IMG/VR virus record: IMGVR_UViG_3300046665_000548
Span: 124,001-188,000 of that record
DNA length: 64,000 nt
Strand: one strand, 5' to 3'
The position numbers were made by a program, and so were the translations under genes. Below are positions 13,032 through 55,903 of the stretch, piece by piece (within the stretch, counting starts at the first letter, position 1; every line of letters begins with the position of its first letter). The notes beneath the pieces were generated by a model. The model searched no databases, was not told the origin of the DNA, and saw only the letters and a program-made list of their open reading frames with translations.

Positions 13032-13115
13032 GCGGGCGTGGCGGAATGGTTTAGACGCGCTGGCTTCAAACCCCAGTTCTTCGGAGTGGGGGTTCAAGTC
13101 CCTCCGCCCGCACCA
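13032..13115 (+). tRNA. tRNA-Leu(CAA)
   Basis: Class II, loop TT-CAA-AC, C31-C39 mismatch, A73, CCA. Confidence 0.85.
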
Positions 13116-13535: not shown

Positions 13536-13622
13536 GAGCCGGTGTCCCGAGTGGCGAAGGGGGCGGACTTTTAATCCGTTGTTGAGAGACCATCGTGGGT
13601 TCGAGTCCCACCCGGCTCCCCA
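13536..13622 (+). tRNA. tRNA with TTT (Lys) anticodon in a class II, Tyr-like body
   Basis: GAGCCGG/CCGGCTC acceptor, loop CT-TTT-AA, 15-nt variable region, C73, CCA. Confidence 0.8.
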
Positions 13623-31751: not shown

Positions 31752-32333
31752 ATGTTGCGCGGCGTTATTTTAGTGTTTTTGTGTTTCTCTTCGATGGCCA
31801 ATGCGGCCGGTTATTTGAAAGTCGGAGAGGTAACGCGAGCGCCGCGCGGCTGGATAGAATTCTGCTCTGAAAATCCGAAAGAATGTGTCGTGGGCCAATA
31901 TCAGGCCCGCGACATCATTATTACGCAGACGGCGTGGAAGGATTTGGTACGGGTCAATCGTTGGGTCAACGAGACCATCAAGCCAATGACCGACATGGAC
32001 CATTGGGGTGTGATCGAGAAGTGGTCGCTACCGACTGATGGTTACGGCGATTGCGAAGATTACGTCTTGCTCAAGCGCAAAATGCTGATCGACGCTGGCT
32101 GGCCCCGCGAGGCGCTGCTTGTCGCCGTGGTGCGCGACAAGAAAAACGATGGCCATGCCGTGCTCATCGTGAAAACCGACAAAGGCGAGTATGCTCTGGA
32201 TAACCAGAACGAAAACGTTTTGCCGGTTGGAGAAACAGGGTATCGTTACGTAAAGCGTCAGTCGCAGACTGACGAAAATTCCTGGGTCTCGCTCGGTTAT
32301 TCGACGGGTCCGGAAGCTGTAGGCAGCAACTGA
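31752..32333 (+). CDS. bacterial transglutaminase-like cysteine proteinase (BTLCP, peptidase C93)
   Basis: Signal peptide, GDCEDYVLLKR, GHAVL, LDN catalytic triad. Confidence 0.92.
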   Translation: MLRGVILVFLCFSSMANAAGYLKVGEVTRAPRGWIEFCSENPKECVVGQYQARDIIITQTAWKDLVRVNRWVNETIKPMTDMDHWGVIEKWSLPTDGYGDCEDYVLLKRKMLIDAGWPREALLVAVVRDKKNDGHAVLIVKTDKGEYALDNQNENVLPVGETGYRYVKRQSQTDENSWVSLGYSTGPEAVGSN

Positions 32334-33485: not shown

Positions 33486-33516
33486 CTCAAGAGTGTGTCG
33501 CCCACACACTTTTGAG
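33486..33516 (+). promoter_or_regulatory. 13-bp hairpin sequestering the leuS Shine-Dalgarno
   Basis: CTCAAGAGTGTGT/ACACACTTTTGAG includes GAG of GAGGA. Confidence 0.7.
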
Positions 33517-33522
33517 GACGAA

Positions 33523-34785
33523 ATGGAAAACGATTTTTACTGCACCGTCATGTTTCCGTATCCATCTGGAGCGGGACTGCACCTGGGCCATTACTACAAT
33601 TACGCGATCACCGACTCGTACTGCCGATGGCTGCGCTATCGCGGGCAGTCTGTGTTTCAACCATTCGGCTATGATGCCTTTGGTCTGCCCGCTGAGAACT
33701 ATGCACGCGAGATTGGCGGCGATCCGGCCGATGTGACGCGAGCGAACATTGCGCGTTTTCGCGTGCAAATGGATCGCATGAACACGCAGTTCGATGAGCG
33801 GCTGGTAACATGCGAGCCGCCATATGTGAAATGGACGCAGTGGCTGTTTCTGCGAATGCAGGAGCGCGGACTGGCTTACAAGGCTTGGGGTCGAGTGAAC
33901 TGGTGCCCATCGTGCGAAACCGTACTGGCTAATGAGCAGGTCCAAGACGGCCACTGCGAGCGCTGTAGTTCGGCCGTAGACCCACGAGAGATGAACCAGT
34001 GGTATTTCCGGATCACCGACTACAAAGACCGCCTGATTGCCGGACTGGATCATATCGATTATCCGGAAGGCACAAAGAAAATGCAGCGCGTCTGGCTGGA
34101 GAACCTGCAAGATTGGTGCGTGTCTCGTCAACGTAAATGGGGCTGCCCGATCCCGGTAGAGGGAGAAACGGATACCCTGGATACGTTCGTGGACTCGTCA
34201 TTTTACTTTCTGCGGTATCTGACCGATTCGACGGAGGAGTTTTTGCCAGAGGGTGCGTTCAAACAGGTCGATCTGTACGTGGGCGGGGCCGAGCATGCCT
34301 GTATGCATCTGATCTACGCGCGCTTTGTGCATATGTTTCTGTATGATATCGGCGTCGTTCCAGTTGAGGAGCCATTCAAAAAGGTCATTCACCAGGGCAT
34401 GATCACCAAGGATGGGGCAAAGATGTCCAAGTCCAAGGGAAACGCGGTCAACGCGGATGATTATGATGCGGATGAACTGCGGTTCTACCTGATGTTCCTG
34501 GGACATTACTTCGACGGTGGTGATTGGTCCGATCAACACATCACTGGCGTTCGTCGCTTTTTCGGCAAGATGAAACGTTGGATGAGCGAACCCGGCTCGG
34601 ATCAAATCGACACGTCTAAGTTCGAGGAACTGATCGACCGCAACACGCGAGCGTTCAAGTTCAACAAGGTGGTAAGCGGCTTCATGGAGTTCTATAATCA
34701 GAACAAATCACGTAAGCCTGATGCGGAAAGCTGTCAGAAAATCGAGACACTACTGCGAATATTCGCACCTGGATTCGGTAACTAA
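33523..34785 (+). CDS. leuS: leucyl-tRNA synthetase, minimal (no CP1 editing domain)
   Basis: MFPYPSGAGLHLGH, GYDAFGLPAEN, WCPSCETVLANEQV, DWCVSRQRKWG, DTFVDSS, KMSKS; only 420 aa. Confidence 0.9.
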   Translation: MENDFYCTVMFPYPSGAGLHLGHYYNYAITDSYCRWLRYRGQSVFQPFGYDAFGLPAENYAREIGGDPADVTRANIARFRVQMDRMNTQFDERLVTCEPPYVKWTQWLFLRMQERGLAYKAWGRVNWCPSCETVLANEQVQDGHCERCSSAVDPREMNQWYFRITDYKDRLIAGLDHIDYPEGTKKMQRVWLENLQDWCVSRQRKWGCPIPVEGETDTLDTFVDSSFYFLRYLTDSTEEFLPEGAFKQVDLYVGGAEHACMHLIYARFVHMFLYDIGVVPVEEPFKKVIHQGMITKDGAKMSKSKGNAVNADDYDADELRFYLMFLGHYFDGGDWSDQHITGVRRFFGKMKRWMSEPGSDQIDTSKFEELIDRNTRAFKFNKVVSGFMEFYNQNKSRKPDAESCQKIETLLRIFAPGFGN

Positions 34786-34834
34786 TGTCTGTGAAATTTT
34801 TGAAATACGTGCCGCGATGGCCAAAGCGGGTTGT

Positions 34835-34863
34835 TAGCCGGGCTCCTTTTTGGAGCCCGGTTA
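34835..34863. terminator. 12-bp hairpin downstream of leuS
   Basis: TAGCCGGGCTCC/GGAGCCCGGTTA. Confidence 0.5.
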
Positions 34864-35145
34864 CTCATCCAAGGTTACTGAGTAAAGGTTGGGGGCCGTT
34901 TCGTTCGGAATGGTATTCGTTCTGCTCTCGGCATCCATATCATGACGAGACCTGCGGCGCGTGTCACGCCGGAACATGGAATAACATCTATAAGCTGTGG
35001 ATTTCCAACAAAGTCCACGACTGGGCGTATCCGCTATGGTATTGGTGGAAGAACTCAAGGATATCGAAATGACTTTTGATCTCGGAATACCTCCATTCAC
35101 CCGCGCGCGGCATCGGGCCGCACCACCTCGCGGGTGGAGGATGAC

Positions 35146-35391: not shown

Positions 35392-36193
35392 TGCAGATCG
35401 AGAACCGCATTAGTATCATCAAGCGTCGCATCAGCGATCTTGAGCAACGATCAGAAGAAAATGGCGATCATGTTTACCAGTTAAGGGATGATATCTTGTC
35501 TGGAAAGATCAGCCAAAGTGAATTTACCGCTAGACTAGATCGGGTTCGCGAAGTACATTCCAGTCTTCGTGTCGAGCTTGATGCTTTGGCGCGCGAAGCT
35601 GGAGCGTTACGTGGAGCAATTACATCGTGATTATCTAGATATCTTGGCGAAGAAGTTTCGCGCCGAGGTAATGATCGTAACTGCCGATGCTTTTATTGAT
35701 AGGCATCTCGACACTGGTCTGACAATCGAAGACATGGCGACGCGGTTGAACACCAGCGCCGATGCGATTCGCCGTATGTTCGACATGAATGACCCCGCTA
35801 CCAAACGGGGTCTCGGTCTGTTGTCCGATATGTGCGCCGCTTTGGGATGCCGCCCGGTCGTTACCATTCGCGATATCGGCAGTCCTCCTGAAATCACTAC
35901 AGATCGCGAAACTCGTACCGGGGACCATCTGCTCCAAGTGGCGAAATCGCTCGGGTGGCCCGACGATGGCGAGGGCGCGCTTGAGTTCGTTATGCGGAGG
36001 ACACGTGAGGTTGCGCTCGAAGATGCAGCAGCCACGACCGCGCTCCGAGAGATCGCGTCTATCGGTGCCCAAATCACTGATCCGGACAACGTATACGGGG
36101 TTCAGATGACGAACCTTGCCATCGCCGCGTTGGCGCGTCCTCCTGGTTCACAAAACACTTGACGTTTTTCTAATTCCTGTCATTGGATACGGC

Positions 36194-38002
36194 ATGCACG
36201 AATATCGTTCCCATACTTGCGACTCGCTGTCGCCATCACAAATCGATCAGACAGTTCGCCTGTCCGGTTGGTGTCACCGTATCCGTAACCATGGTGGTAT
36301 CCTTTTCATCGATCTTCGCGATCACTACGGCATCACGCAGTGCGTGATCGATCCCGCAGTTCTCCCTCAGGCTGAAAGCCTTGGTGAAGAATGGGTGATT
36401 CGCGTCGATGGTACAGTGCGATTTCGACCCCCAGGTACCGAGAATTCAAAACTCTCGACAGGAGAGATCGAGGTAAAGGTAGCTTCGCTTGACGTGCTCG
36501 GACCGGTCGTCGGGGCGCTGCCGATGCCTGTCGCGCATCTCCATTCCACGAGCGACGGTACGTTGCAGGAAGTCGAATATCCAGAAGACCTTCGGTTGAA
36601 ATATCGATTCTTGGACCTTCGCCGCGAACGGCTGCACGAGAACATGATGAAGCGAATGAAAATCATTCGCTGGCTGCGTCATCGCATGGAGGACGAAGGC
36701 TTCTTCGAATTCCAGACGCCCATCCTTACCGCATCGTCCCCAGAAGGGGCGCGAGACTTTCTCGTGCCTGCTCGGTTGCATCCAGGCAAGTTCTACGCGT
36801 TGCCGCAGGCTCCGCAGCAGTTCAAGCAACTTACCATGGTTGCTGGCTTCGACCGATACTTTCAAATTGCGCCATGCTTCCGTGATGAAGCTGCACGTTC
36901 AGATCGGTCACCGGGCGAGTTCTATCAACTCGACATCGAAATGAGTTTCGTAACTCAGGAAGACGTGTTTCGGGTTGTCGAACCGACGATTCGAGATTTG
37001 TTCAAGGAGTTCGGCGGCGACAAAGCCATCACCGAGACCTTCCCGCGTATTCCGTACAAGGAAGCGTTGCTGCGTTTTGGTACCGATAAGCCAGACCTGC
37101 GTAACCCTCTGCGTATTGTGGACGTGTCCAAGGCTCTCCAAGCCGACGACATGACACTCGCCCCTTTCAAGAAAGGCGTCGGCAGAGCTATCGTTGTGCC
37201 AGCCGCGATGCTGGCCGGGAAGTCGCGCAAGTGGTTCAAGGATATGGAAGGCTGGGCACAATCCCAAGGCGCGGCCGGTTTAGGATATCTGAGCGTCATG
37301 CTGACCGATGGTCGCGTGAGCTTCGCTGGACCGCTTGCTAAGTTTTTCGGTGAGCAATCTAGCGAGTTGGTTCGCGTCGCCGCCGACACAATCTTTGACG
37401 AGGGAGATGTCATTTTCTTCGCCGTTGGCGAGGAAAGCTCCACCATCAAATTCAGTGGACTGCTTCGTACAAAGCTCGGAGAGGAGCTTGGTCTGATCGA
37501 GCAAGACCGGTTCGAGTTCTGCTGGATCGTGGATTATCCCATGTTCGAGTGGAATTCTGACGAGAAGAAGATCGACTTCTCCCACAACCCCTTCTCGATG
37601 CCTCAGGGCGGCCTGGAGGCGCTTGAGGGCGATCCATTAGGTGTTCTTGCCTATCAGTACGATATCGTCTGTAATGGCATCGAGCTTTCGTCTGGTGCCA
37701 TCCGGAACCATCGACCAGATATCATGGAGAAGGCGTTCTCCATCGCTGGCTACGACAAGGAGGTGTTGGAAGAAAAGTTCGGCGGCATGCTGAATGCATT
37801 CCGTTGCGGAGCACCACCGCATGGTGGAATTGCACCGGGTATCGACCGCATGGTTATGCTTCTGTGCGAAGCTGAGAACCTGCGCGATGTCGTGCTGTTC
37901 CCAATGAACCAGAAAGGACAAGACCTGATGATGGGCGCTCCGTCTTCAGTAACTGCAAAGCAACTTGACGAGTTGAATATCAGGATCATTCCGAGGAAAT
38001 AA
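36194..38002 (+). CDS. aspS: aspartyl-tRNA synthetase (non-discriminating type)
   Basis: [50 protein letters not shown]. Confidence 0.95.
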
Positions 38003-40136: not shown

Positions 40137-41123
40137 ATGCACGAATATACGCACAACGGTCATTTCAAGTGGGGCTTCAACGGCGTGTGGGGGTCGCCGC
40201 CTTCTAAAGAAGCTGGTCCCCAAAGCTACGCTGTGAAGTTTGGCGTGTCGAGTGGGCGCAAGCCGAATTTCGGTAAGGCGTGTCTGTCGGCCGCTCAGTT
40301 GATACGCGACAAAACCGATCTTCCAATCAACGTCGCGTTGTCCGGAGGTTACGACAGCGAAGTCACACTGCGATCTTTCGTTGATAGCGGCATTCCTGTT
40401 ACGGCGTACGTTGCGCGCTTCAAAGATGATGTAAACGTTGAGGAGTTCGAAACAGCCTGTTCGGTAGCAGATCGTTACGGCGTTCCTCTAAAGATTCTTG
40501 ATCTCGATGTGATCAAGTTCTGGGAAGAGAACTGGCGAGACTACGCTGACAGATACCATGTCATCTCTGGTCAATTCATGGTTCACATCTGGATCATGTC
40601 TCAACTCGATGGCTTCCCCGTTATCGGCGGGGGCGATCCCTATTTGGTGCTGACTAATCCGGATGACTATCAGGCGGCGGACGAAGACAAACGCTGGTAT
40701 TGTCGCTTCCTATCGAGGCAGCTTTCGACTACGCATTACCTGACCAGTGTTGATCGTCCAGGCGTCCCATTGTTTTATTACTATACTCCGGAACTTATTC
40801 TGTCATCGTTCGCCAACAATCACGTGGAATCTTTCATCCGTTACTGGGGCGACATCTACGCGAAATACATTACGAACTCACGGATCAAAAAACTCGTCTA
40901 TGGAGATGACTTTCCAACTCACATAGACAGACCGAAGCGAACTGGTTTCGAAGACATCGAGATCGAAGATATGGCCATTCGAAAGAAGTTGCGCACGATC
41001 TCAGAAAACCGAAACCCGCAGGCCATCTATCCGCGTGAGGATTTTGTAGCTGCGCTTCGTGGTGAACGAGAGTATCCAATCGATTGGGCCGCCCACTCCT
41101 ATACAAAGAGACTGTTTCCGTGA
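40137..41123 (+). CDS. PP-loop (asparagine synthase-like) adenine nucleotide alpha-hydrolase
   Basis: VALSGGYDSE; paralog of the next gene. Confidence 0.7.
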   Translation: MHEYTHNGHFKWGFNGVWGSPPSKEAGPQSYAVKFGVSSGRKPNFGKACLSAAQLIRDKTDLPINVALSGGYDSEVTLRSFVDSGIPVTAYVARFKDDVNVEEFETACSVADRYGVPLKILDLDVIKFWEENWRDYADRYHVISGQFMVHIWIMSQLDGFPVIGGGDPYLVLTNPDDYQAADEDKRWYCRFLSRQLSTTHYLTSVDRPGVPLFYYYTPELILSSFANNHVESFIRYWGDIYAKYITNSRIKKLVYGDDFPTHIDRPKRTGFEDIEIEDMAIRKKLRTISENRNPQAIYPREDFVAALRGEREYPIDWAAHSYTKRLFP

Positions 41124-42550
41124 CACGCATTCCTACACTGACGAAAAACAACTATTTCAAATTCGGTTACAACAACGAGTGGTTTCGTCTGAGACAGTCT
41201 CCAGATGAGGTCTTTACGGTTGATTTCGACCGGTGCACGCGCATGCCAAAAGACTGGCGAACGGAGACTATTCAGGCAGCGCGCGACATCTATGATTCCA
41301 CAGACCTTCCGATCCAAGTCATGTTCAGTGGTGGGATCGACAGCGAGGTTGTAGTGCAGGCTTTCCAAGCGGCCGGTGTGCCTTTCTCATGCGCGATCAT
41401 GCGCTTCAACAAGGGATACAATCAGCACGATATCAAGTTCGCGATAGACTATTGCACCACGCACTCAATTCCAAAGCAGATGTACGAACTCGACCTTGAT
41501 GATTTCTACGAGGGCGGACGGCTGCTTGAATATGCGGACGCCGTGAAGGCTTGCTCGTCCCATCAATGTGTGACGATGTGGTTAGCAGATCAGCTTGATG
41601 GATACCCGGTGATCGGCCAGGGCGAAGGCTATCTCTCGCGCATCGATCACGAGGCCACCGCGAAGCTTAGGGAAGACCCTATGAGCGGCGACGACTATGT
41701 TCTGATGGATAGATGGCAATATCGAGAGAAAGAGCGCATGGCCGCTTGGTATCGCTTCTTTCTTCTCCGCGAGCGTGACGGAGCGCCGGGGTTTCATCAG
41801 TATACGCCTGAGCAGCTTCTCAGCTACATTTCTGATCCTGGCGTGATGTCAGTGGTGAGCCGCAATCTCAAATACTCTACTGCGACCTCTAAGCCGGTCA
41901 TTTACGGTCGGCATTTTGGTTTGAGGCCGCGCGACAAATTCACGGGCTTCGAACAGGCTCTTCACCTTACGGAGAAATGGCAACCGTTTCTTCATGAGAG
42001 GCACATATATGCGGATCAAACCGCTTATTTTGAATATCATGAAATTCTCGATAAGCTAGCGGTAGCTCCTCTCATTCCTGATGATCTTCCGTTCGTTCGC
42101 GACGATTATCCGGATGGCGTATCGGAGGTTGACTACGAGGATTGCGTACCACTGCTGCGCAAGCTCTGGCCCGACAAGGTACCGACGCCTCGCTTCGATG
42201 ATACGCTCAAGCGGATCAAGGTGCCAAAGAGCACTCTGAAGCCTACATTCCTGATTCACGCTATCAATGGCATTCCTGTCGGCACCACGCATGCGTATCG
42301 AACTGGCGACGGCGAGGTTCGTATTCGAGGCACCTATGTTGAGCCCGAGTATAGGCGAACCAGTATTGCTAGCGATCTCGTGCTGGAGGTTCTTAAACTA
42401 TTCCCGGATTGTCACACCGCCTATACGTATCCGCGTGTTGGTTCTGAACAGTTCTATCAGAGCCTGGGTTTCGAGATTACAGGCGGACCATTTCCGATCT
42501 ACAAAGGCATCTATGAGGCCGAAAAATCCTTGCGCGGCAAAGTAGAATAA
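41120..42550 (+). CDS. PP-loop protein fused to a C-terminal GNAT domain
   Basis: VMFSGGIDSE; IRGTYVEPEYRRTSIAS...FYQSLGF; GTGA overlap. Confidence 0.75.
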   Translation: MTRIPTLTKNNYFKFGYNNEWFRLRQSPDEVFTVDFDRCTRMPKDWRTETIQAARDIYDSTDLPIQVMFSGGIDSEVVVQAFQAAGVPFSCAIMRFNKGYNQHDIKFAIDYCTTHSIPKQMYELDLDDFYEGGRLLEYADAVKACSSHQCVTMWLADQLDGYPVIGQGEGYLSRIDHEATAKLREDPMSGDDYVLMDRWQYREKERMAAWYRFFLLRERDGAPGFHQYTPEQLLSYISDPGVMSVVSRNLKYSTATSKPVIYGRHFGLRPRDKFTGFEQALHLTEKWQPFLHERHIYADQTAYFEYHEILDKLAVAPLIPDDLPFVRDDYPDGVSEVDYEDCVPLLRKLWPDKVPTPRFDDTLKRIKVPKSTLKPTFLIHAINGIPVGTTHAYRTGDGEVRIRGTYVEPEYRRTSIASDLVLEVLKLFPDCHTAYTYPRVGSEQFYQSLGFEITGGPFPIYKGIYEAEKSLRGKVE

Positions 42551-44864: not shown

Positions 44865-46151
44865 ATGCATGACATTAACTACATTCGCGATAATCCAGAT
44901 GCTTTCGATGCTGGTCTGGCGGCGCGCGGCCTCAAATCTCAGTCCGAAATATTGATCAACATCGATCAGTCGCGTCGGCACGCCCTGACCGAGCTTCAGC
45001 AAAGACAATCCAAGCGCAACGAGTTGTCGGCGCAAATTGGCGCGGCGATGAAGGCTGGTCAACGCGATGAGGCCGAACGCCTTAAGACAGAGGTGGTAAC
45101 GCTTAAGCACGCAATCGAAGATTGGACCGGTCGCGCTGCAACGTCTCAGACCATACTAACGCATGAACTGGAGCGTATCCCGAATCTACCGGCCGCCGAT
45201 GTGCCCGTTGGCAAGGATGAAACTGCAAATCATTTGGAAACAGTTTGGGAGCCGGACGGTGGGAGGCGCGTGATCGCCAATCCGAAGCCTCACTGGGAGC
45301 TAGGCGAGGCCCTGGGGATGATGGACTTCCAAGCTGGCACGATGCTGGCTGGGCCGAGAAGCACTGTTCTCCGTGGTCCTCTGGCCAAGCTAGCGCGGGG
45401 TCTCGGCAACTGGATGATCGACACTATGACGTTGGAGGGATACAGCGAGGTCGATGTGCCTTGTATCGTCAACGGTGAGATCATGCACGGCACAGGCCAA
45501 CTCCCCAAGTTCGAGGCCGACGCTTATCGGCTGAACGATGCCGACCAATATCTGATCCCCACGGCCGAAGTACCTCTCACCAATCTTGTACGAGACCAGA
45601 TCGTAGATGAGGATGCGCTTCCTCTTCTGTATACGGCTCTGACCCCTTGCTTTCGAAAAGAAGCAGGATCGGCTGGCCGCGACGTGCGTGGCATGATGCG
45701 CCAGCACCAGTTCATGAAATGCGAAGTCGTGATGATCACTCAGCCAGAGTTTTCTGAGATCGACCACATGAAAATGCTCATGCATGTAGGCAACCTCCTC
45801 AAACGACTTTTCCTACCTCACCGGTACATGAAGTTGTGCAGCGGGGACATGGGCTTTTCGGCAAAGAAGACTTACGATTTCGAGGTTTGGCTTCCGAGCC
45901 AAGATGCGTATCGTGAGATTTCTTCCGTGTCGAATTGCGGAGATTTCCAGGCTAGGCGAATGAACGCTCGCTTCCGCAAAAAGGATGGCTCGATCCACTA
46001 TCTGCACACTCTCAATGGGTCTGCTATGGCTGTCGGCCGGACGTTGATTGCCGTCATGGAGAACTACCAGAACGACGACGGATCGATCACGATCCCAGAC
46101 GTTCTCATTCCCTATGTTGGTTTCGGTAAAATCGAAGCGGGCATGCGCTGA
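44865..46151 (+). CDS. serS: seryl-tRNA synthetase
   Basis: GTGQLPKF, YLIPTAEVPL, FRKEAGSAGRDVRGMMRQHQF, EISSVSNCGDFQARR, TLNGSAMAVGR. Confidence 0.96.
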   Translation: MHDINYIRDNPDAFDAGLAARGLKSQSEILINIDQSRRHALTELQQRQSKRNELSAQIGAAMKAGQRDEAERLKTEVVTLKHAIEDWTGRAATSQTILTHELERIPNLPAADVPVGKDETANHLETVWEPDGGRRVIANPKPHWELGEALGMMDFQAGTMLAGPRSTVLRGPLAKLARGLGNWMIDTMTLEGYSEVDVPCIVNGEIMHGTGQLPKFEADAYRLNDADQYLIPTAEVPLTNLVRDQIVDEDALPLLYTALTPCFRKEAGSAGRDVRGMMRQHQFMKCEVVMITQPEFSEIDHMKMLMHVGNLLKRLFLPHRYMKLCSGDMGFSAKKTYDFEVWLPSQDAYREISSVSNCGDFQARRMNARFRKKDGSIHYLHTLNGSAMAVGRTLIAVMENYQNDDGSITIPDVLIPYVGFGKIEAGMR

Positions 46152-54822: not shown

Positions 54823-55095
54823 TTAGCCCCATCGGAGCTTAAAGAGTGCGGCGTCACGTGCCCGTCTGAAATAGAAACTCGATTTGTACCATGTCCAGTT
54901 AAATCCTTCATCGTACATATCGTGAAAGATTCCACCATCCTGATAATGGATCGATCCGGTAATTGGAGTTTTAAAGATATGCTCACCCCACTCGCCAGCC
55001 TCCTGTAGAGGTCCGAATTCATTGAGCGTTATGACGTGAGGTAAGCGCTTCTTAAGCCAATCATCAAGCTCAGACTGTTTAACCCGCGTCGGCAT
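54823..55095 (-). CDS. paralog family protein (FYFRRARDAALFKLRWG)
   Basis: Shared C-terminal motif. Confidence 0.65.
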   Translation of the reverse strand: MPTRVKQSELDDWLKKRLPHVITLNEFGPLQEAGEWGEHIFKTPITGSIHYQDGGIFHDMYDEGFNWTWYKSSFYFRRARDAALFKLRWG

Positions 55096-55903
55096 GGAAC
55101 ACCGGATCGGCGTCTTCGAAGATCATTTCCACTCGGTTTTTTATCTTTAGTATCTTTGGGAAGTGGAACGTCCGTAGACGACTTCTCACAACGGGACCAG
55201 TCGGCCGTCTTGCCTCTGGAATGAGAACTAATTTCTCAGCAGGAAGCTCAGCCTCGAACACCTCTGAACGAATGAACGTCCCGCGTTTGAACGCTTCGGG
55301 ATAATCCTCGAACGTCACACCCTTCTCGCTCAGCAATTCAACCATTCCCTGACGAGATACGCCATTAAGCCGCTTGTGGCTCAAATGATGATGTGCGGCC
55401 ATCGAAACGGAATTGCGTTCGGCGTCGAGCACTCTCCAGAGAATTGCATTGGCAGCTTCTTCCTTTGACGGAAGCTCAAACACCCGAGCGTCGAAATGCG
55501 GAAGCTTGTCAGCATTCTTCGCGAACTGTTCGCTGCTTGCTAGCACAGCCTGATTGAAACGGGCCGTCGCCATGCCAGCAAGGATCGAGCATAGCTTCTG
55601 CACCTTGCCGCCAAACATCAGTTCCTGAGCCGGGTTCTCGCCATCGAGGTACCAAAGCAGAGAAATTTCATCCGACTGCGTATAGCCGATAACCGCATTT
55701 GTTTTCTGAACCAAATAAGATGCGGTCTCAACCATGCAGGCGTGAAACTCGGCGTCGAACGGGCGGACCATTCCCTTAGTGAACTTAGAGAAACCTCGGC
55801 CGTCAATTCGAGCATAGAGCGGCTGCCGCGCATCGAAACGAAGGGAGGTCTGCGCCGACTCGTACTGTTTCATACGGTCGCCCAAATCATCTTTAAACAT
55901 CAC
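55079..55903 (-). CDS. tRNA(His) guanylyltransferase Thg1-like protein
   Basis: RMKQYE, RIDGRGFSKFT, GYTQSDEISL, FGGKVQK, FDARVF. Confidence 0.93.
   Translation of the reverse strand: MMFKDDLGDRMKQYESAQTSLRFDARQPLYARIDGRGFSKFTKGMVRPFDAEFHACMVETASYLVQKTNAVIGYTQSDEISLLWYLDGENPAQELMFGGKVQKLCSILAGMATARFNQAVLASSEQFAKNADKLPHFDARVFELPSKEEAANAILWRVLDAERNSVSMAAHHHLSHKRLNGVSRQGMVELLSEKGVTFEDYPEAFKRGTFIRSEVFEAELPAEKLVLIPEARRPTGPVVRSRLRTFHFPKILKIKNRVEMIFEDADPVFHADAG

What the first reader, a model, noticed from the sequence alone, without database searches (positions are those of the whole stretch)
33523..34785. Minimal 420-aa LeuRS lacking the CP1 editing and C-terminal domains
Seen: HIGH-type (HLGH) and KMSKS motifs and the zinc knuckle are intact. 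The sequence goes from MQRVWLE directly into NLQDWCVSRQR, deleting the CP1 editing insert, and ends soon after the helical bundle. Bacterial LeuRS is typically over 800 aa. Inference: an editing-free enzyme that may be error-prone, insensitive to editing-site (benzoxaborole) inhibitors, specific for phage tRNA-Leu, or repurposed.
Basis: partly seen in the sequence, partly recalled or inferred. Interest (0 to 1): 0.65.

Follow-up and report, generated by a model that had tools for sequence, protein, structure and literature searches.

The report
Stripped-down leucyl-tRNA synthetase of huge phages
A 608-kb phage carries a conserved 420-residue leucyl-tRNA synthetase with no proofreading domain and no tRNA-elbow-binding tail, about half the normal size and smaller than any LeuRS I found described. 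It probably still charges tRNA-Leu, but that is untested.

Summary
Window 33523-34785 (+) encodes a 420-aa bacterial-type LeuRS with an intact HIGH motif (HLGH), KMSKS motif, leucine-pocket motifs and first zinc knuckle. It lacks the CP1 editing domain and the C-terminal tRNA-binding domain.

It is not a decaying fragment. More than 120 protein clusters and about 50 viral contigs, some over 600 kb, carry the same 405-442-aa form. All end at the same point, and dN/dS is 0.03-0.08. The family is almost entirely viral.

Some relatives keep a 115-aa vestigial CP1 with the editing motifs, and one keeps the second zinc module. All of them share the C-terminal truncation.

tRNA-Leu genes are enriched next to the gene in related phages. 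The host phage has seven tRNA-Leu genes.

The phage's ThrRS, AlaRS-like and GluRS-like genes are also cut down to their cores, and no editing module is detectable anywhere in 608 kb.

Best reading: an editing-free, streamlined LeuRS that charges tRNA-Leu during infection. The main doubt is that deleting the C-terminal domain abolishes charging in E. coli and Thermus LeuRS. I class it as a new variant of a known kind.

The parts
33514..33518 (+). Shine-Dalgarno GAGGA, 4 nt before the ATG at 33523
   Evidence: Read directly. Homologues start at the equivalent Met.
33523..34785 (+). Gene for the 420-aa truncated LeuRS (P0001), TAA stop at 34783-34785
   Evidence: The AlphaFold2 model has pLDDT 91.2 and pTM 0.90. 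The best structural match is M. mobile LeuRS 3ziu, TM 0.88-0.90.
33580..33591 (+). HIGH signature (HLGH, residues 20-23)
   Evidence: H20, G22 and H23 are invariant in 65 family members.
33874..34008 (+). First zinc-knuckle module (ZN1, about residues 118-162; CPSC at 33904-33915, CERC at 33955-33966)
   Evidence: C128, C131 and C145 are invariant. A few distant members have lost the cysteines.
34093..34116 (+). CP1 deletion junction (WLE|NLQDW, between residues 193 and 194). About 190 aa of editing domain are missing here.
   Evidence: Relatives L059-L062 carry a 115-aa vestigial CP1 at exactly this point.
34144..34167 (+). Second deletion junction (CPIPV|EGE, between residues 212 and 213). 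The ZN2 module of about 54 aa is missing here.
   Evidence: Alignments. The version in the 735-kb phage LR756501 still has this module.
34405..34434 (+). TKDG linker (residues 295-298) followed by KMSKS (300-304)
   Evidence: K300 and K303 are invariant. M. mobile LeuRS has GKDG in the same place, shown experimentally to support charging (PMC3643597).
34468..34782 (+). Truncated helical anticodon-binding bundle (residues 316-420), ending at FAPGF. The last helix, tether and C-terminal domain are absent.
   Evidence: Secondary structure and alignment. dN/dS is 0.02-0.12, similar to the catalytic part. It is not recognised by PF08264.
34785..35072 (+). 95-aa ORF with a C-H-C-C zinc-knuckle motif. 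Its ATG overlaps the LeuRS stop (TAATG). Its link to LeuRS is uncertain.
   Evidence: Homologues lie just downstream of LeuRS only in one other clade, L029-L036/L045-46. No Pfam hit.
13032..13115 (+). tRNA-Leu(CAA), type II, A73, encoded CCA. It is the only one of the phage's seven tRNA-Leu genes inside the window and a likely substrate.

Best explanation
The gene encodes a functional, streamlined bacterial-type leucyl-tRNA synthetase that is typical of huge phages. It keeps the Rossmann-fold synthetic site, the first zinc knuckle, a short flexible TKDG linker before KMSKS, and most of the helical anticodon-binding bundle. It has lost the N-terminal helix, the CP1 editing domain, the second zinc module and the C-terminal elbow-binding domain.

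Shown here: the domain content, conservation of the active-site motifs, purifying selection, restriction to viruses, and linkage to tRNA-Leu genes.

Inferred: it activates leucine and transfers it to tRNA-Leu (phage and probably host isoacceptors, all with A73), mainly through contacts with the acceptor end and acceptor stem. It does no post-transfer proofreading. This would boost or safeguard Leu-tRNA supply during infection, at the cost of some fidelity.

It appears to be one part of a genome-wide set of synthetases cut down to their charging cores.
For: 1. Catalytic integrity. HLGH, MFPYPSG, the Asp in GYDAFGLPAEN, DTFVDSSFY, GGxEHxxxHLxY, HQGM and KMSKS all align with T. thermophilus LeuRS and are invariant or nearly so in 65 members. 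That these motifs line the leucine and ATP pockets is my recollection of the 1h3n literature.

2. Selection. dN/dS is 0.03-0.08 across the whole gene and 0.02-0.12 in the helical bundle.

3. Family. More than 120 clusters at 65-88% identity are all 412-443 aa. About 50 viral loci of 405-442 aa end at the same residue. The truncated forms make one clade apart from bacterial LeuRS, with SH-aLRT 94-99.

4. Vestigial editing domain. The C-terminally truncated relatives L059-L062 keep a 115-aa CP1 with the T-rich FTTKPET motif and the D..RD motif. An editing site is useful only to an enzyme that handles aminoacyl-tRNA, so the tail-less scaffold probably does bind tRNA.

5. Linkage to tRNA-Leu. In 43 non-redundant loci, 52 of 163 tRNAs within 6 kb of the gene are tRNA-Leu. 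The own genome has 7 of 57 (binomial p 4e-11; these are not independent events). The nearest tRNA is Leu in 7 of 19 loci. The 735-kb phage has five tRNA-Leu genes in a row 1 kb upstream.

6. Experimental precedents. M. mobile LeuRS lacks CP1 and the leucine-specific domain, carries GKDG, and is active (PMC3643597); it is also the best structural match. Tupanvirus mini-AlaRS lost its editing and elbow-binding domains yet charges tRNA through the acceptor stem and complements yeast (PMC10036535).

7. Genome context:
- The phage has 57 tRNAs.
- AspRS, SerRS and ArgRS are full length.
- ThrRS starts at the catalytic core, with no N1/N2 editing region.
- Core-only AlaRS-like and GluRS-like genes are present.
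- No PF13603, PF07973, PF04073 or PF01588 domain is found anywhere.
Against: - Deleting the C-terminal domain abolishes aminoacylation in T. thermophilus and E. coli LeuRS and weakens tRNA binding in M. tuberculosis LeuRS (PMC3561953). No compensating element was identified here.
- The helical bundle is not recognised by PF08264, and the protein scores below the leuS equivalog cut-off.
- There are no activity or expression data. No RNA run was found.
- In the window itself the nearest tRNA-Leu is 20 kb away.
- The tRNA-Leu enrichment is inflated by tRNA-Leu arrays.
Confidence: 0.6

Rival explanations
1. The protein makes leucyl-adenylate but does not charge tRNA on its own. Either it needs a phage or host partner that supplies the missing tRNA-elbow grip, or it uses Leu-AMP or tRNA binding for something other than translation, such as a leucine- or tRNA-Leu-dependent regulatory role. 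The Sulfolobus LeuRS-I paralogue behaves this way: it binds tRNA and forms Leu-AMP but cannot aminoacylate.
For: - C-terminal domain deletion kills charging in the two model bacterial LeuRSs (PMC3561953).
- LeuRS paralogues with lost charging activity exist (PMC9437257).
- A small zinc-knuckle ORF overlaps the LeuRS stop codon here, and a homologue sits downstream of LeuRS in one distant clade.
- The phage also has AlaRS-like and GluRS-like core fragments that may not be true synthetases.
Against: - No neighbour is conserved across the family. The small ORF is present in only two lineages and is not homologous to the ORF in the same position in the 88%-identical relative.
- No tRNA_bind (PF01588) protein is encoded in the genome.
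- KMSKS, the TKDG linker and the helical bundle are all kept under purifying selection.
- Vestigial CP1 editing sites survive in tail-less relatives.
- The gene is linked to tRNA-Leu genes.
Confidence: 0.27
2. The enzyme has changed substrate. It would charge a different amino acid, or charge non-Leu tRNAs, such as the phage's amber-suppressor tRNA with a long variable arm and A73, or the type-II-like tRNAs with Lys or Asn anticodons. It would then act as a recoding device.
For: - LeuRS does not read the anticodon (established knowledge).
- The genome encodes two CUA-anticodon tRNAs, one 88 nt long with a long variable arm and A73.
- It also encodes type-II-like tRNAs with UUU and GUU anticodons.
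Against: - The leucine-pocket motifs are unchanged from canonical LeuRS.
- There is no sign of stop-codon recoding. TAG ends 109 of 636 long ORFs, and treating TAG as sense does not raise coding density more than doing the same for TGA.
- Canonical tRNA-Leu genes, not suppressors, cluster beside the gene in relatives.
Confidence: 0.08
3. The ORF is a decaying remnant or an assembly or annotation artefact of a full-length leuS.
For: It is half the normal length and scores below the equivalog cut-off.
Against: - There are hundreds of same-length relatives with the same ends.
- dN/dS is 0.03-0.08.
- The fold prediction is confident and compact.
- The start has an RBS.
- No other LeuRS pieces are present in the genome.
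Confidence: 0.01

Closest known systems
Mycoplasma mobile LeuRS (637 aa; PDB 3ziu)
   Same: It is a bacterial-type LeuRS that naturally lacks CP1 and has an xKDG tetrapeptide (GKDG there, TKDG here) in place of the leucine-specific domain. It is the best structural match to the model (TM 0.88-0.90, 34% identity) and the second-best PDB sequence hit. It is experimentally active (PMC3643597).
   Different: M. mobile LeuRS is about 215 aa longer. The Foldseek alignment leaves roughly 100 C-terminal residues of 3ziu unmatched, which I take to be its C-terminal domain. I did not check which of the N-terminal helix, the ZN2 region or the C-terminal domain it keeps. It replaces CP1 with a nonapeptide, whereas the phage enzyme has essentially no linker. 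It is cellular and the cell's only LeuRS. The phage clade branches elsewhere, among Clostridia and Pseudomonadota-like LeuRSs, so the CP1 loss is probably independent. M. mobile itself was not in my tree.
Tupanvirus mini-AlaRS (PMC10036535)
   Same: It is a viral synthetase that lost both its editing domain and its elbow-binding C-terminal domain, yet still charges tRNA through the acceptor stem and complements yeast. This is the same kind of double loss in a virus with a large translation gene set.
   Different: It is a class II enzyme for a different amino acid, from a eukaryotic giant virus, and is known from a single example. The phage LeuRS family has hundreds of members and its activity is untested.
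Engineered C-terminal-domain deletions of E. coli and T. thermophilus LeuRS (PMC3561953 and references therein)
   Same: The same C-terminal domain is missing.
   Different: The engineered deletions are inactive in charging and editing. The phage family has kept its truncated form under purifying selection, which implies either compensation or a different job.
Sulfolobaceae LeuRS-I and Halobacteria LeuRS2 paralogues (PMC9437257)
   Same: They are LeuRS copies with impaired editing or C-terminal regions and reduced or absent charging activity. They are the model for the 'repurposed' rival explanation.
   Different: They are of the archaeal type, full length, and exist as second copies in cells. 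Their domains are degenerate rather than cleanly excised.
N-terminally truncated E. coli ThrRS (residues 242-642; PDB 1evk, 4hwo)
   Same: It is a charging-competent core without the editing domain. The phage's own ThrRS aligns with exactly this construct from its first residues. This shows that the same stripping has occurred in a second editing-class synthetase of this genome.
   Different: It is a laboratory construct of a different enzyme. That it is active but mischarges serine is my recollection, not something checked here.

Membership tests
Bacterial-type leucyl-tRNA synthetase (TIGR00396 leuS_bact) | Class I Rossmann core with HIGH and KMSKS signatures | tested here: met
   HLGH at residues 20-23 and KMSKS at 300-304. 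PF00133 matches at 9.6e-40.
Bacterial-type leucyl-tRNA synthetase (TIGR00396 leuS_bact) | Best match is LeuRS rather than Ile, Val or MetRS, with the leucine-pocket motifs conserved | tested here: met
   leuS_bact scores 402 bits against 142 or less for valS, ileS and metG. The motifs align with 1h3n and are invariant in the family.
Bacterial-type leucyl-tRNA synthetase (TIGR00396 leuS_bact) | Score above the curated equivalog cut-off | tested here: not met
   402 bits against a cut-off of 548.4.
Bacterial-type leucyl-tRNA synthetase (TIGR00396 leuS_bact) | CP1 editing domain (PF13603) inserted after ZN1 | tested here: not met
   No PF13603 in the protein or anywhere in the 608-kb genome. The alignment gap covers 1h3n residues 227-417.
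Bacterial-type leucyl-tRNA synthetase (TIGR00396 leuS_bact) | Helical anticodon-binding domain (PF08264) | tested here: inconclusive
   PF08264 gives no hit. The model shows four to five helices at 316-414, and these align with the bacterial bundle up to the AP(F/H) helix.
Bacterial-type leucyl-tRNA synthetase (TIGR00396 leuS_bact) | C-terminal tRNA-elbow-binding domain on a flexible tether | tested here: not met
   The protein ends about 95-100 aa before the bacterial C-termini. Model positions 746-843 are unmatched in the whole genome.
Bacterial-type leucyl-tRNA synthetase (TIGR00396 leuS_bact) | Leucylation of tRNA-Leu | not testable with these tools
   Needs a biochemical assay or complementation.
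Naturally CP1-less minimal LeuRS of the Mycoplasma mobile kind | CP1 replaced by a short linker, and the leucine-specific domain replaced by an xKDG tetrapeptide | tested here: met
   The WLE|NLQDW junction and TKDG at residues 295-298. The M. mobile features are described in PMC3643597.
Naturally CP1-less minimal LeuRS of the Mycoplasma mobile kind | C-terminal region retained: the chain extends well beyond the helical bundle. That this region is the C-terminal domain in M. mobile LeuRS is my inference. | tested here: not met
   The phage protein stops at FAPGF. 3ziu chains are 575-621 residues long, with TM of only 0.62-0.65 when normalised by the target.
Naturally CP1-less minimal LeuRS of the Mycoplasma mobile kind | Common descent with the Mycoplasma enzyme | not tested
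   M. mobile LeuRS was not available as a sequence for the tree. The phage clade groups with other bacterial lineages.
   ESM Atlas neighbour clusters are 95-97% Viruses. Only one such gene was found among 185,579 prokaryote species genomes, on a 2.9-kb MAG contig.

The most novel reading that the evidence does not exclude
The 420-aa protein is a fully active stand-alone LeuRS that has dispensed with elbow and variable-arm contacts. It would recognise tRNA-Leu through the acceptor end and A73 only. That would let it charge both the ordinary long-arm tRNA-Leu and the short-arm (type I, 74-78 nt) tRNA-Leu genes that these phages place next to it, giving huge phages a private, proofreading-free leucine-charging system. 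It would be one element of a general programme in which huge phages strip the editing and accessory domains from their synthetases (LeuRS, ThrRS, AlaRS-like and GluRS-like in this genome).
Probability: 0.3. Interest if true: 0.8.

Novelty: new variant of a known kind. Interest (0 to 1): 0.68.

Why it matters
At 420 residues this would be by far the smallest natural LeuRS. Mycoplasma mobile LeuRS, at 637 aa, is described as 'exceptionally small' (PMC3643597).

It lacks the C-terminal domain that experiments found essential for charging in E. coli and Thermus LeuRS. If it is active, three things follow:
- It redefines the minimal requirements for recognising tRNA-Leu.
- It is a compact LeuRS that benzoxaboroles should not inhibit, which could be useful for engineering orthogonal tRNA/synthetase pairs.
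- It would suggest that huge phages run translation on proofreading-free synthetases during infection, possibly as a general rule.

If it is inactive in charging, it is an abundant, strongly conserved synthetase-like protein with an unknown role in phage infection.

Either outcome can be tested directly with standard assays. I found no paper that describes this family. Public annotations simply call these proteins 'leucyl-tRNA synthetase'.

Tried and rejected
- Split gene or trans-acting domains. Searches of the whole 608-kb genome for PF13603 (CP1), PF08264 (anticodon-binding domain), the full leuS model, PF01588 (tRNA_bind), PF04073 (YbaK-type editing) and PF07973 (SAD editing) found nothing beyond the gene itself. 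A short divergent C-terminal-domain-like protein could still escape these searches.
- Small downstream zinc-knuckle ORF as a partner. An HMM built from it finds homologues only in one other clade. The word search found no relatives. The ORF in the same position in the 88%-identical relative is unrelated. The complex prediction gave 'no answer' (score 0.00), which is evidence neither for nor against binding.
- Stop-codon recoding, suggested by the two CUA-anticodon tRNAs. Coding density under TAG-sense is no better than under TGA-sense or TAA-sense, so I used no alternative code.
- Conserved synteny. AspRS is adjacent here but in only 1 of 65 related loci.
- Promoter and terminator scan and Rfam scan around the gene. 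Results were at chance level, and only a tRNA was found.
- Expression. No RNA run holds the locus. Only two leaf-litter metagenome DNA runs share 5% of the words, so I did not use read laying.
- Near-identical phage records. There is no megablast hit in the phage collection.
- The big representative protein search was not run. It carries no names or genomic context, so it could not separate virus from cell.
Full report
WHAT IS THERE

The window is bases 124001-188000 of a 607,744-bp virus record that CheckV rates as complete. It has 52% G+C, 57 tRNA genes and a tmRNA.

The ORF at 33523-34785 (+) encodes 420 residues (P0001). Its ATG is preceded by GAGGA at 33514-33518. An in-frame ATG 14 codons upstream (33481) has no such site, and homologues begin at the position of 33523.

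Pfam finds only the class I catalytic families (PF00133 at 1e-39, PF09334 at 4e-38). NCBIfam places it clearly with bacterial LeuRS: TIGR00396 at 5e-120 and 402 bits, against 142 bits or less for Val, Ile and MetRS. That score is below the equivalog cut-off of 548.

The LeuRS model matches in four blocks, at positions 22-221, 411-428, 484-570 and 604-745 of 843. The alignment with T. thermophilus LeuRS (PDB 1h3n, E 3e-88) jumps from residue 226 to 418, which is the CP1 editing domain. It jumps again from 436 to 487.

A multiple alignment with full-length bacterial relatives shows four clean excisions:
- an N-terminal helix of about 35 aa;
- CP1, about 190 aa, at WLE|NLQDW (window 34093-34116);
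- the second zinc module, about 54 aa, at CPIPV|EGE (34144-34167);
- the last 95-100 aa, comprising the final helix of the anticodon-binding bundle, the tether and the C-terminal domain.

The leucine-specific domain is also absent, but it is absent in the nearest bacterial LeuRSs too. The phage enzyme has TKDG immediately before KMSKS.

THE FOLD

An AlphaFold2 model built on 65 family members is confident (mean pLDDT 91.2, pTM 0.90, no disordered segment). Foldseek ranks Mycoplasma mobile LeuRS (3ziu) first, with TM 0.88-0.90 normalised on the query and 34% identity. M. mobile LeuRS is the known natural CP1-less LeuRS. Other bacterial LeuRS structures follow.

NOT A FRAGMENT, BUT A LARGE VIRAL FAMILY

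The word-based protein search returned more than 120 clusters at 65-88% identity. All but a few are 412-443 aa, and they come from contigs of up to 633 kb. They share the same N- and C-termini, ending at ...FAPGF.

A scan of IMG/VR gave 65 loci. About 50 carry a 405-442-aa gene that ends at the same alignment column.

Close pairs give dN/dS of 0.03-0.08. The helical C-terminal third is under the same constraint as the catalytic part, at 0.02-0.12, although it is more variable over long distances.

In 65 sequences the following are invariant or nearly so: H20/G22/H23, the MFPYPS strand, D51, the DTFVDSSFY segment, G254-G255-x-E257-H258...H262, H290-Q291-G292, and K300/K303.

A scan of one genome from each of 185,579 prokaryote species found the short form only once, on a 2.9-kb contig of a Bacteroidota MAG. 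Every other hit I inspected was an 807-1252-aa LeuRS with CP1. The nearest ESM Atlas clusters are 95-97% viral, mostly Uroviricota. One neighbouring 510-aa cluster is labelled mostly bacterial, and I did not resolve that.

On a maximum-likelihood tree the truncated forms are one clade (SH-aLRT 94-99), separate from bacterial LeuRS and from five full-length LeuRSs found on viral contigs.

A SERIES OF REDUCTIONS

Four loci (L059-L062) encode 526-537-aa proteins with the same C-terminal truncation but a 115-aa insert exactly at the CP1 point. The insert is recognised as PF13603 at 1e-20 to 5e-23. It retains the threonine-rich FTTKPET motif and the D..RD motif of the editing site.

These forms nest inside a subclade of fully CP1-less forms. 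CP1 was therefore probably lost more than once, after the C-terminal truncation.

The 735-kb phage LR756501 has a 508-aa version at 36% identity. It has no CP1 but still has the second zinc module, and it ends at IAPGFRM. L058 lacks CP1, ZN2 and the tail but has an insert before KMSKS.

The shared, defining character of the family is thus the loss of the C-terminal domain. The other inserts were trimmed independently in different lineages.

LINK TO tRNA-LEU

The phage encodes six type-II tRNA-Leu genes (CAA, UAA, GAG twice, UAG, CAG), all with A73 and an encoded CCA. It also encodes one 77-nt type-I tRNA-Leu(UAA) with A73.

In the window the nearest tRNA-Leu lies 20 kb upstream. In related phages the gene sits among tRNA-Leu genes:
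- In 43 loci with LeuRS less than 90% identical to each other, 52 of the 163 tRNAs within 6 kb are tRNA-Leu. The background here is 7 of 57 (binomial p 4e-11).
- That p value is inflated, because tRNA-Leu genes come in arrays.
- 12 of the 19 loci that have any tRNA have a tRNA-Leu, and the nearest tRNA is Leu in 7 of 19.
- In L020 and L025 a tRNA-Leu ends 16-22 bases before the LeuRS start. In LR756501 five tRNA-Leu genes and nothing else lie 1 kb upstream.
- Twenty-one of 57 tRNA-Leu genes found near the LeuRS gene in 13 related loci are short, 74-78 nt, without a long variable arm. All but one or two of them have A73.

A GENOME-WIDE PATTERN

The same phage has full-length AspRS (window 36116-38002, with a GAD insert), SerRS (44865-46151) and ArgRS.

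Its ThrRS is different. It is 487 aa and aligns from its seventh residue with the E. coli ThrRS 242-642 construct, so it has no N1/N2 editing region.

It also has a 287-aa AlaRS-like protein that matches only the first 160 or so positions of alaS, and a 294-aa GluRS catalytic core without an anticodon-binding domain.

No CP1, SAD, YbaK-type or tRNA_bind domain is detectable in the 608 kb, while the controls for these searches were positive. The LeuRS is therefore one case of a general stripping of editing and accessory domains in this genome.

HOW IT MOST LIKELY WORKS

Shown here: an intact, selected synthetic site; a compact LeuRS fold; viral restriction; linkage to tRNA-Leu genes; and no proofreading module.

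Inferred: the enzyme activates leucine and charges tRNA-Leu without post-transfer editing.

Three points support tRNA charging even though the C-terminal domain is missing.
1. Tail-less relatives keep a CP1 editing site, which only makes sense for an enzyme that holds aminoacyl-tRNA.
2. The xKDG linker, KMSKS and the helical bundle are all conserved. In M. mobile LeuRS, GKDG is enough to support charging, and it restores 55% of activity to an E. coli LeuRS lacking its leucine-specific domain (PMC3643597).
3. A virus has already been shown to do the equivalent. Tupanvirus mini-AlaRS lost both its editing domain and its elbow-binding C-Ala domain, yet it binds and charges tRNA-Ala through the acceptor stem and rescues yeast (PMC10036535).

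The counter-evidence is serious. Deleting the C-terminal domain abolishes charging and editing in T. thermophilus and E. coli LeuRS, and it cuts tRNA binding to about 30% in an M. tuberculosis construct (PMC3561953). I found no compensating element.

I therefore put 0.6 on a stand-alone editing-free LeuRS and about 0.27 on an adenylate-forming protein that needs a partner or does something else. I put about 0.08 on a changed substrate and about 0.01 on a remnant.

COMPARISON WITH KNOWN SYSTEMS

It works like M. mobile LeuRS (CP1-less, xKDG linker) and like Tupanvirus mini-AlaRS (loss of editing and elbow binding in a virus).

As for membership, it is a LeuRS homologue of the bacterial type. 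It fails three defining features of the curated family: CP1, the C-terminal domain and the cut-off score. It also differs from the M. mobile enzyme, whose chain runs about 100 residues past the helical bundle. It is best filed as a new, virus-specific structural variant of LeuRS.

I found no description of it. Papers on huge phages mention synthetases only as counts (PMC7162821). Searches combining LeuRS, CP1, phage, megaphage, truncated and editing domain returned nothing relevant.

LIMITS

- No biochemical or expression data exist. Only two leaf-litter metagenome runs share a few words with the locus.
- The identification of pocket residues rests on motif alignment and on my memory of the 1h3n literature.
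- The complex prediction with the small downstream ORF gave no answer.
- The tree used a quick search and a limited sample of bacteria.
- The genome-collection scans are pattern-based and can miss divergent members.

Noticed in passing
G000:C1:4091-4256 (outside the window; locus L153): Two adjacent tRNAs have the amber-reading anticodon CUA. One is 88 nt long with a 5-bp long variable arm, A73 and an ordinary 4-bp D stem. The other is 77 nt with G73. I found no sign of TAG recoding in coding density or stop-codon usage.
   Followed up: partly
G000:C1:1944-2020 (outside the window): A tRNA-like gene with an 8-nt anticodon loop, which ARAGORN reads as a four-base anticodon (ggaa). Similar odd calls (acat, gtag) occur in related phage loci L014 and L006.
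   Followed up: no
window 13536-13622 (+), and G000:C1:343310-343395: Type-II-like tRNAs (86-87 nt, long variable arm) carry anticodons UUU (Lys) and GUU (Asn), next to normal 75-76-nt tRNAs for the same amino acids. The UUU one has a Ser-like D arm and C73. Related phages also have 84-91-nt tRNAs called as Asn, Ile, Thr, Met, His, Arg and Cys. Their amino-acid identity is unclear.
   Followed up: partly
G000:C1:219040-219116 (-), and loci L008, L012, L013, L014, L019, L021, L025, L042, L154: Short (74-78 nt) type-I tRNA-Leu genes with A73 occur alongside normal long-arm tRNA-Leu, often with the same anticodons and next to the truncated LeuRS gene (21 of 57 tRNA-Leu inspected).
   Followed up: partly
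G000:C1:592053-593519 (-) (locus L152 2554-4020): The ThrRS is 487 aa and begins at the catalytic core, with no TGS or N2 editing region. It has an insert of about 73 aa inside the catalytic domain (query residues 86-158 are unmatched to E. coli ThrRS).
   Followed up: partly
G000:C1:29017-29880 (+), and G000:C1:212066-212953 (-): A 287-aa AlaRS-like protein matches only the first 160 or so positions of alaS. A 294-aa GluRS catalytic core has no anticodon-binding domain and scores better against gltX than against GluQRS. A 251-aa GlyRS-like fragment lies at locus L152 1345-2103.
   Followed up: partly
window 34785-35072 (+): A 95-aa Trp/Lys/Arg-rich ORF carries a C-x2-H-x7-C-x2-C motif, and its ATG overlaps the LeuRS stop. 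Homologues lie directly downstream of LeuRS only in the L029-L036/L045-46 clade. It has no Pfam hit and no relatives by word search.
   Followed up: yes
G000:C1:576377-576796 (outside the window): A permuted (two-piece) tmRNA gene with tag ANDNVAVSEYALAA. From memory, permuted tmRNAs and ANDN...ALAA tags are typical of Alphaproteobacteria, so this may hint at the host. The only sequencing runs sharing words with the locus are leaf-litter metagenomes.
   Followed up: no
window 55079-55903 (-): A Thg1-family tRNA-His guanylyltransferase homologue (PF04446, 7e-29). This is another tRNA-maturation gene in the window.
   Followed up: no
window 36116-38002 (+) and 44865-46151 (+): Full-length bacterial-type AspRS (with OB fold and GAD insert) and SerRS (with the N-terminal coiled coil). 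Not all of the phage's synthetases are trimmed.
   Followed up: yes
window 31752-32333 (+): A BTLCP transglutaminase-like cysteine protease (PF06035, 9e-65) with a signal-peptide-like N-terminus, lying 1.2 kb upstream of LeuRS.
   Followed up: no
window 41084-42550 (+): A 488-aa protein with a C-terminal GNAT acetyltransferase domain. A similar gene lies about 5 kb downstream of LeuRS in the 88%-identical relative (L155).
   Followed up: no
loci L059-L062 (viral contigs) and L154 (LR756501.1): Intermediate LeuRS forms. The 526-537-aa versions have a 115-aa vestigial CP1 that keeps the editing motifs. A 508-aa version lacks CP1 but keeps the second zinc module. All have the same C-terminal truncation.
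   Followed up: yes
locus L054 (viral contig IMGVR_UViG_3300033069_001351): The LeuRS frame is interrupted here. The ORF is 280 aa, although tblastn matches residues 1-416 at 69% identity. This could be a frameshift or a sequencing error in one family member.
   Followed up: no
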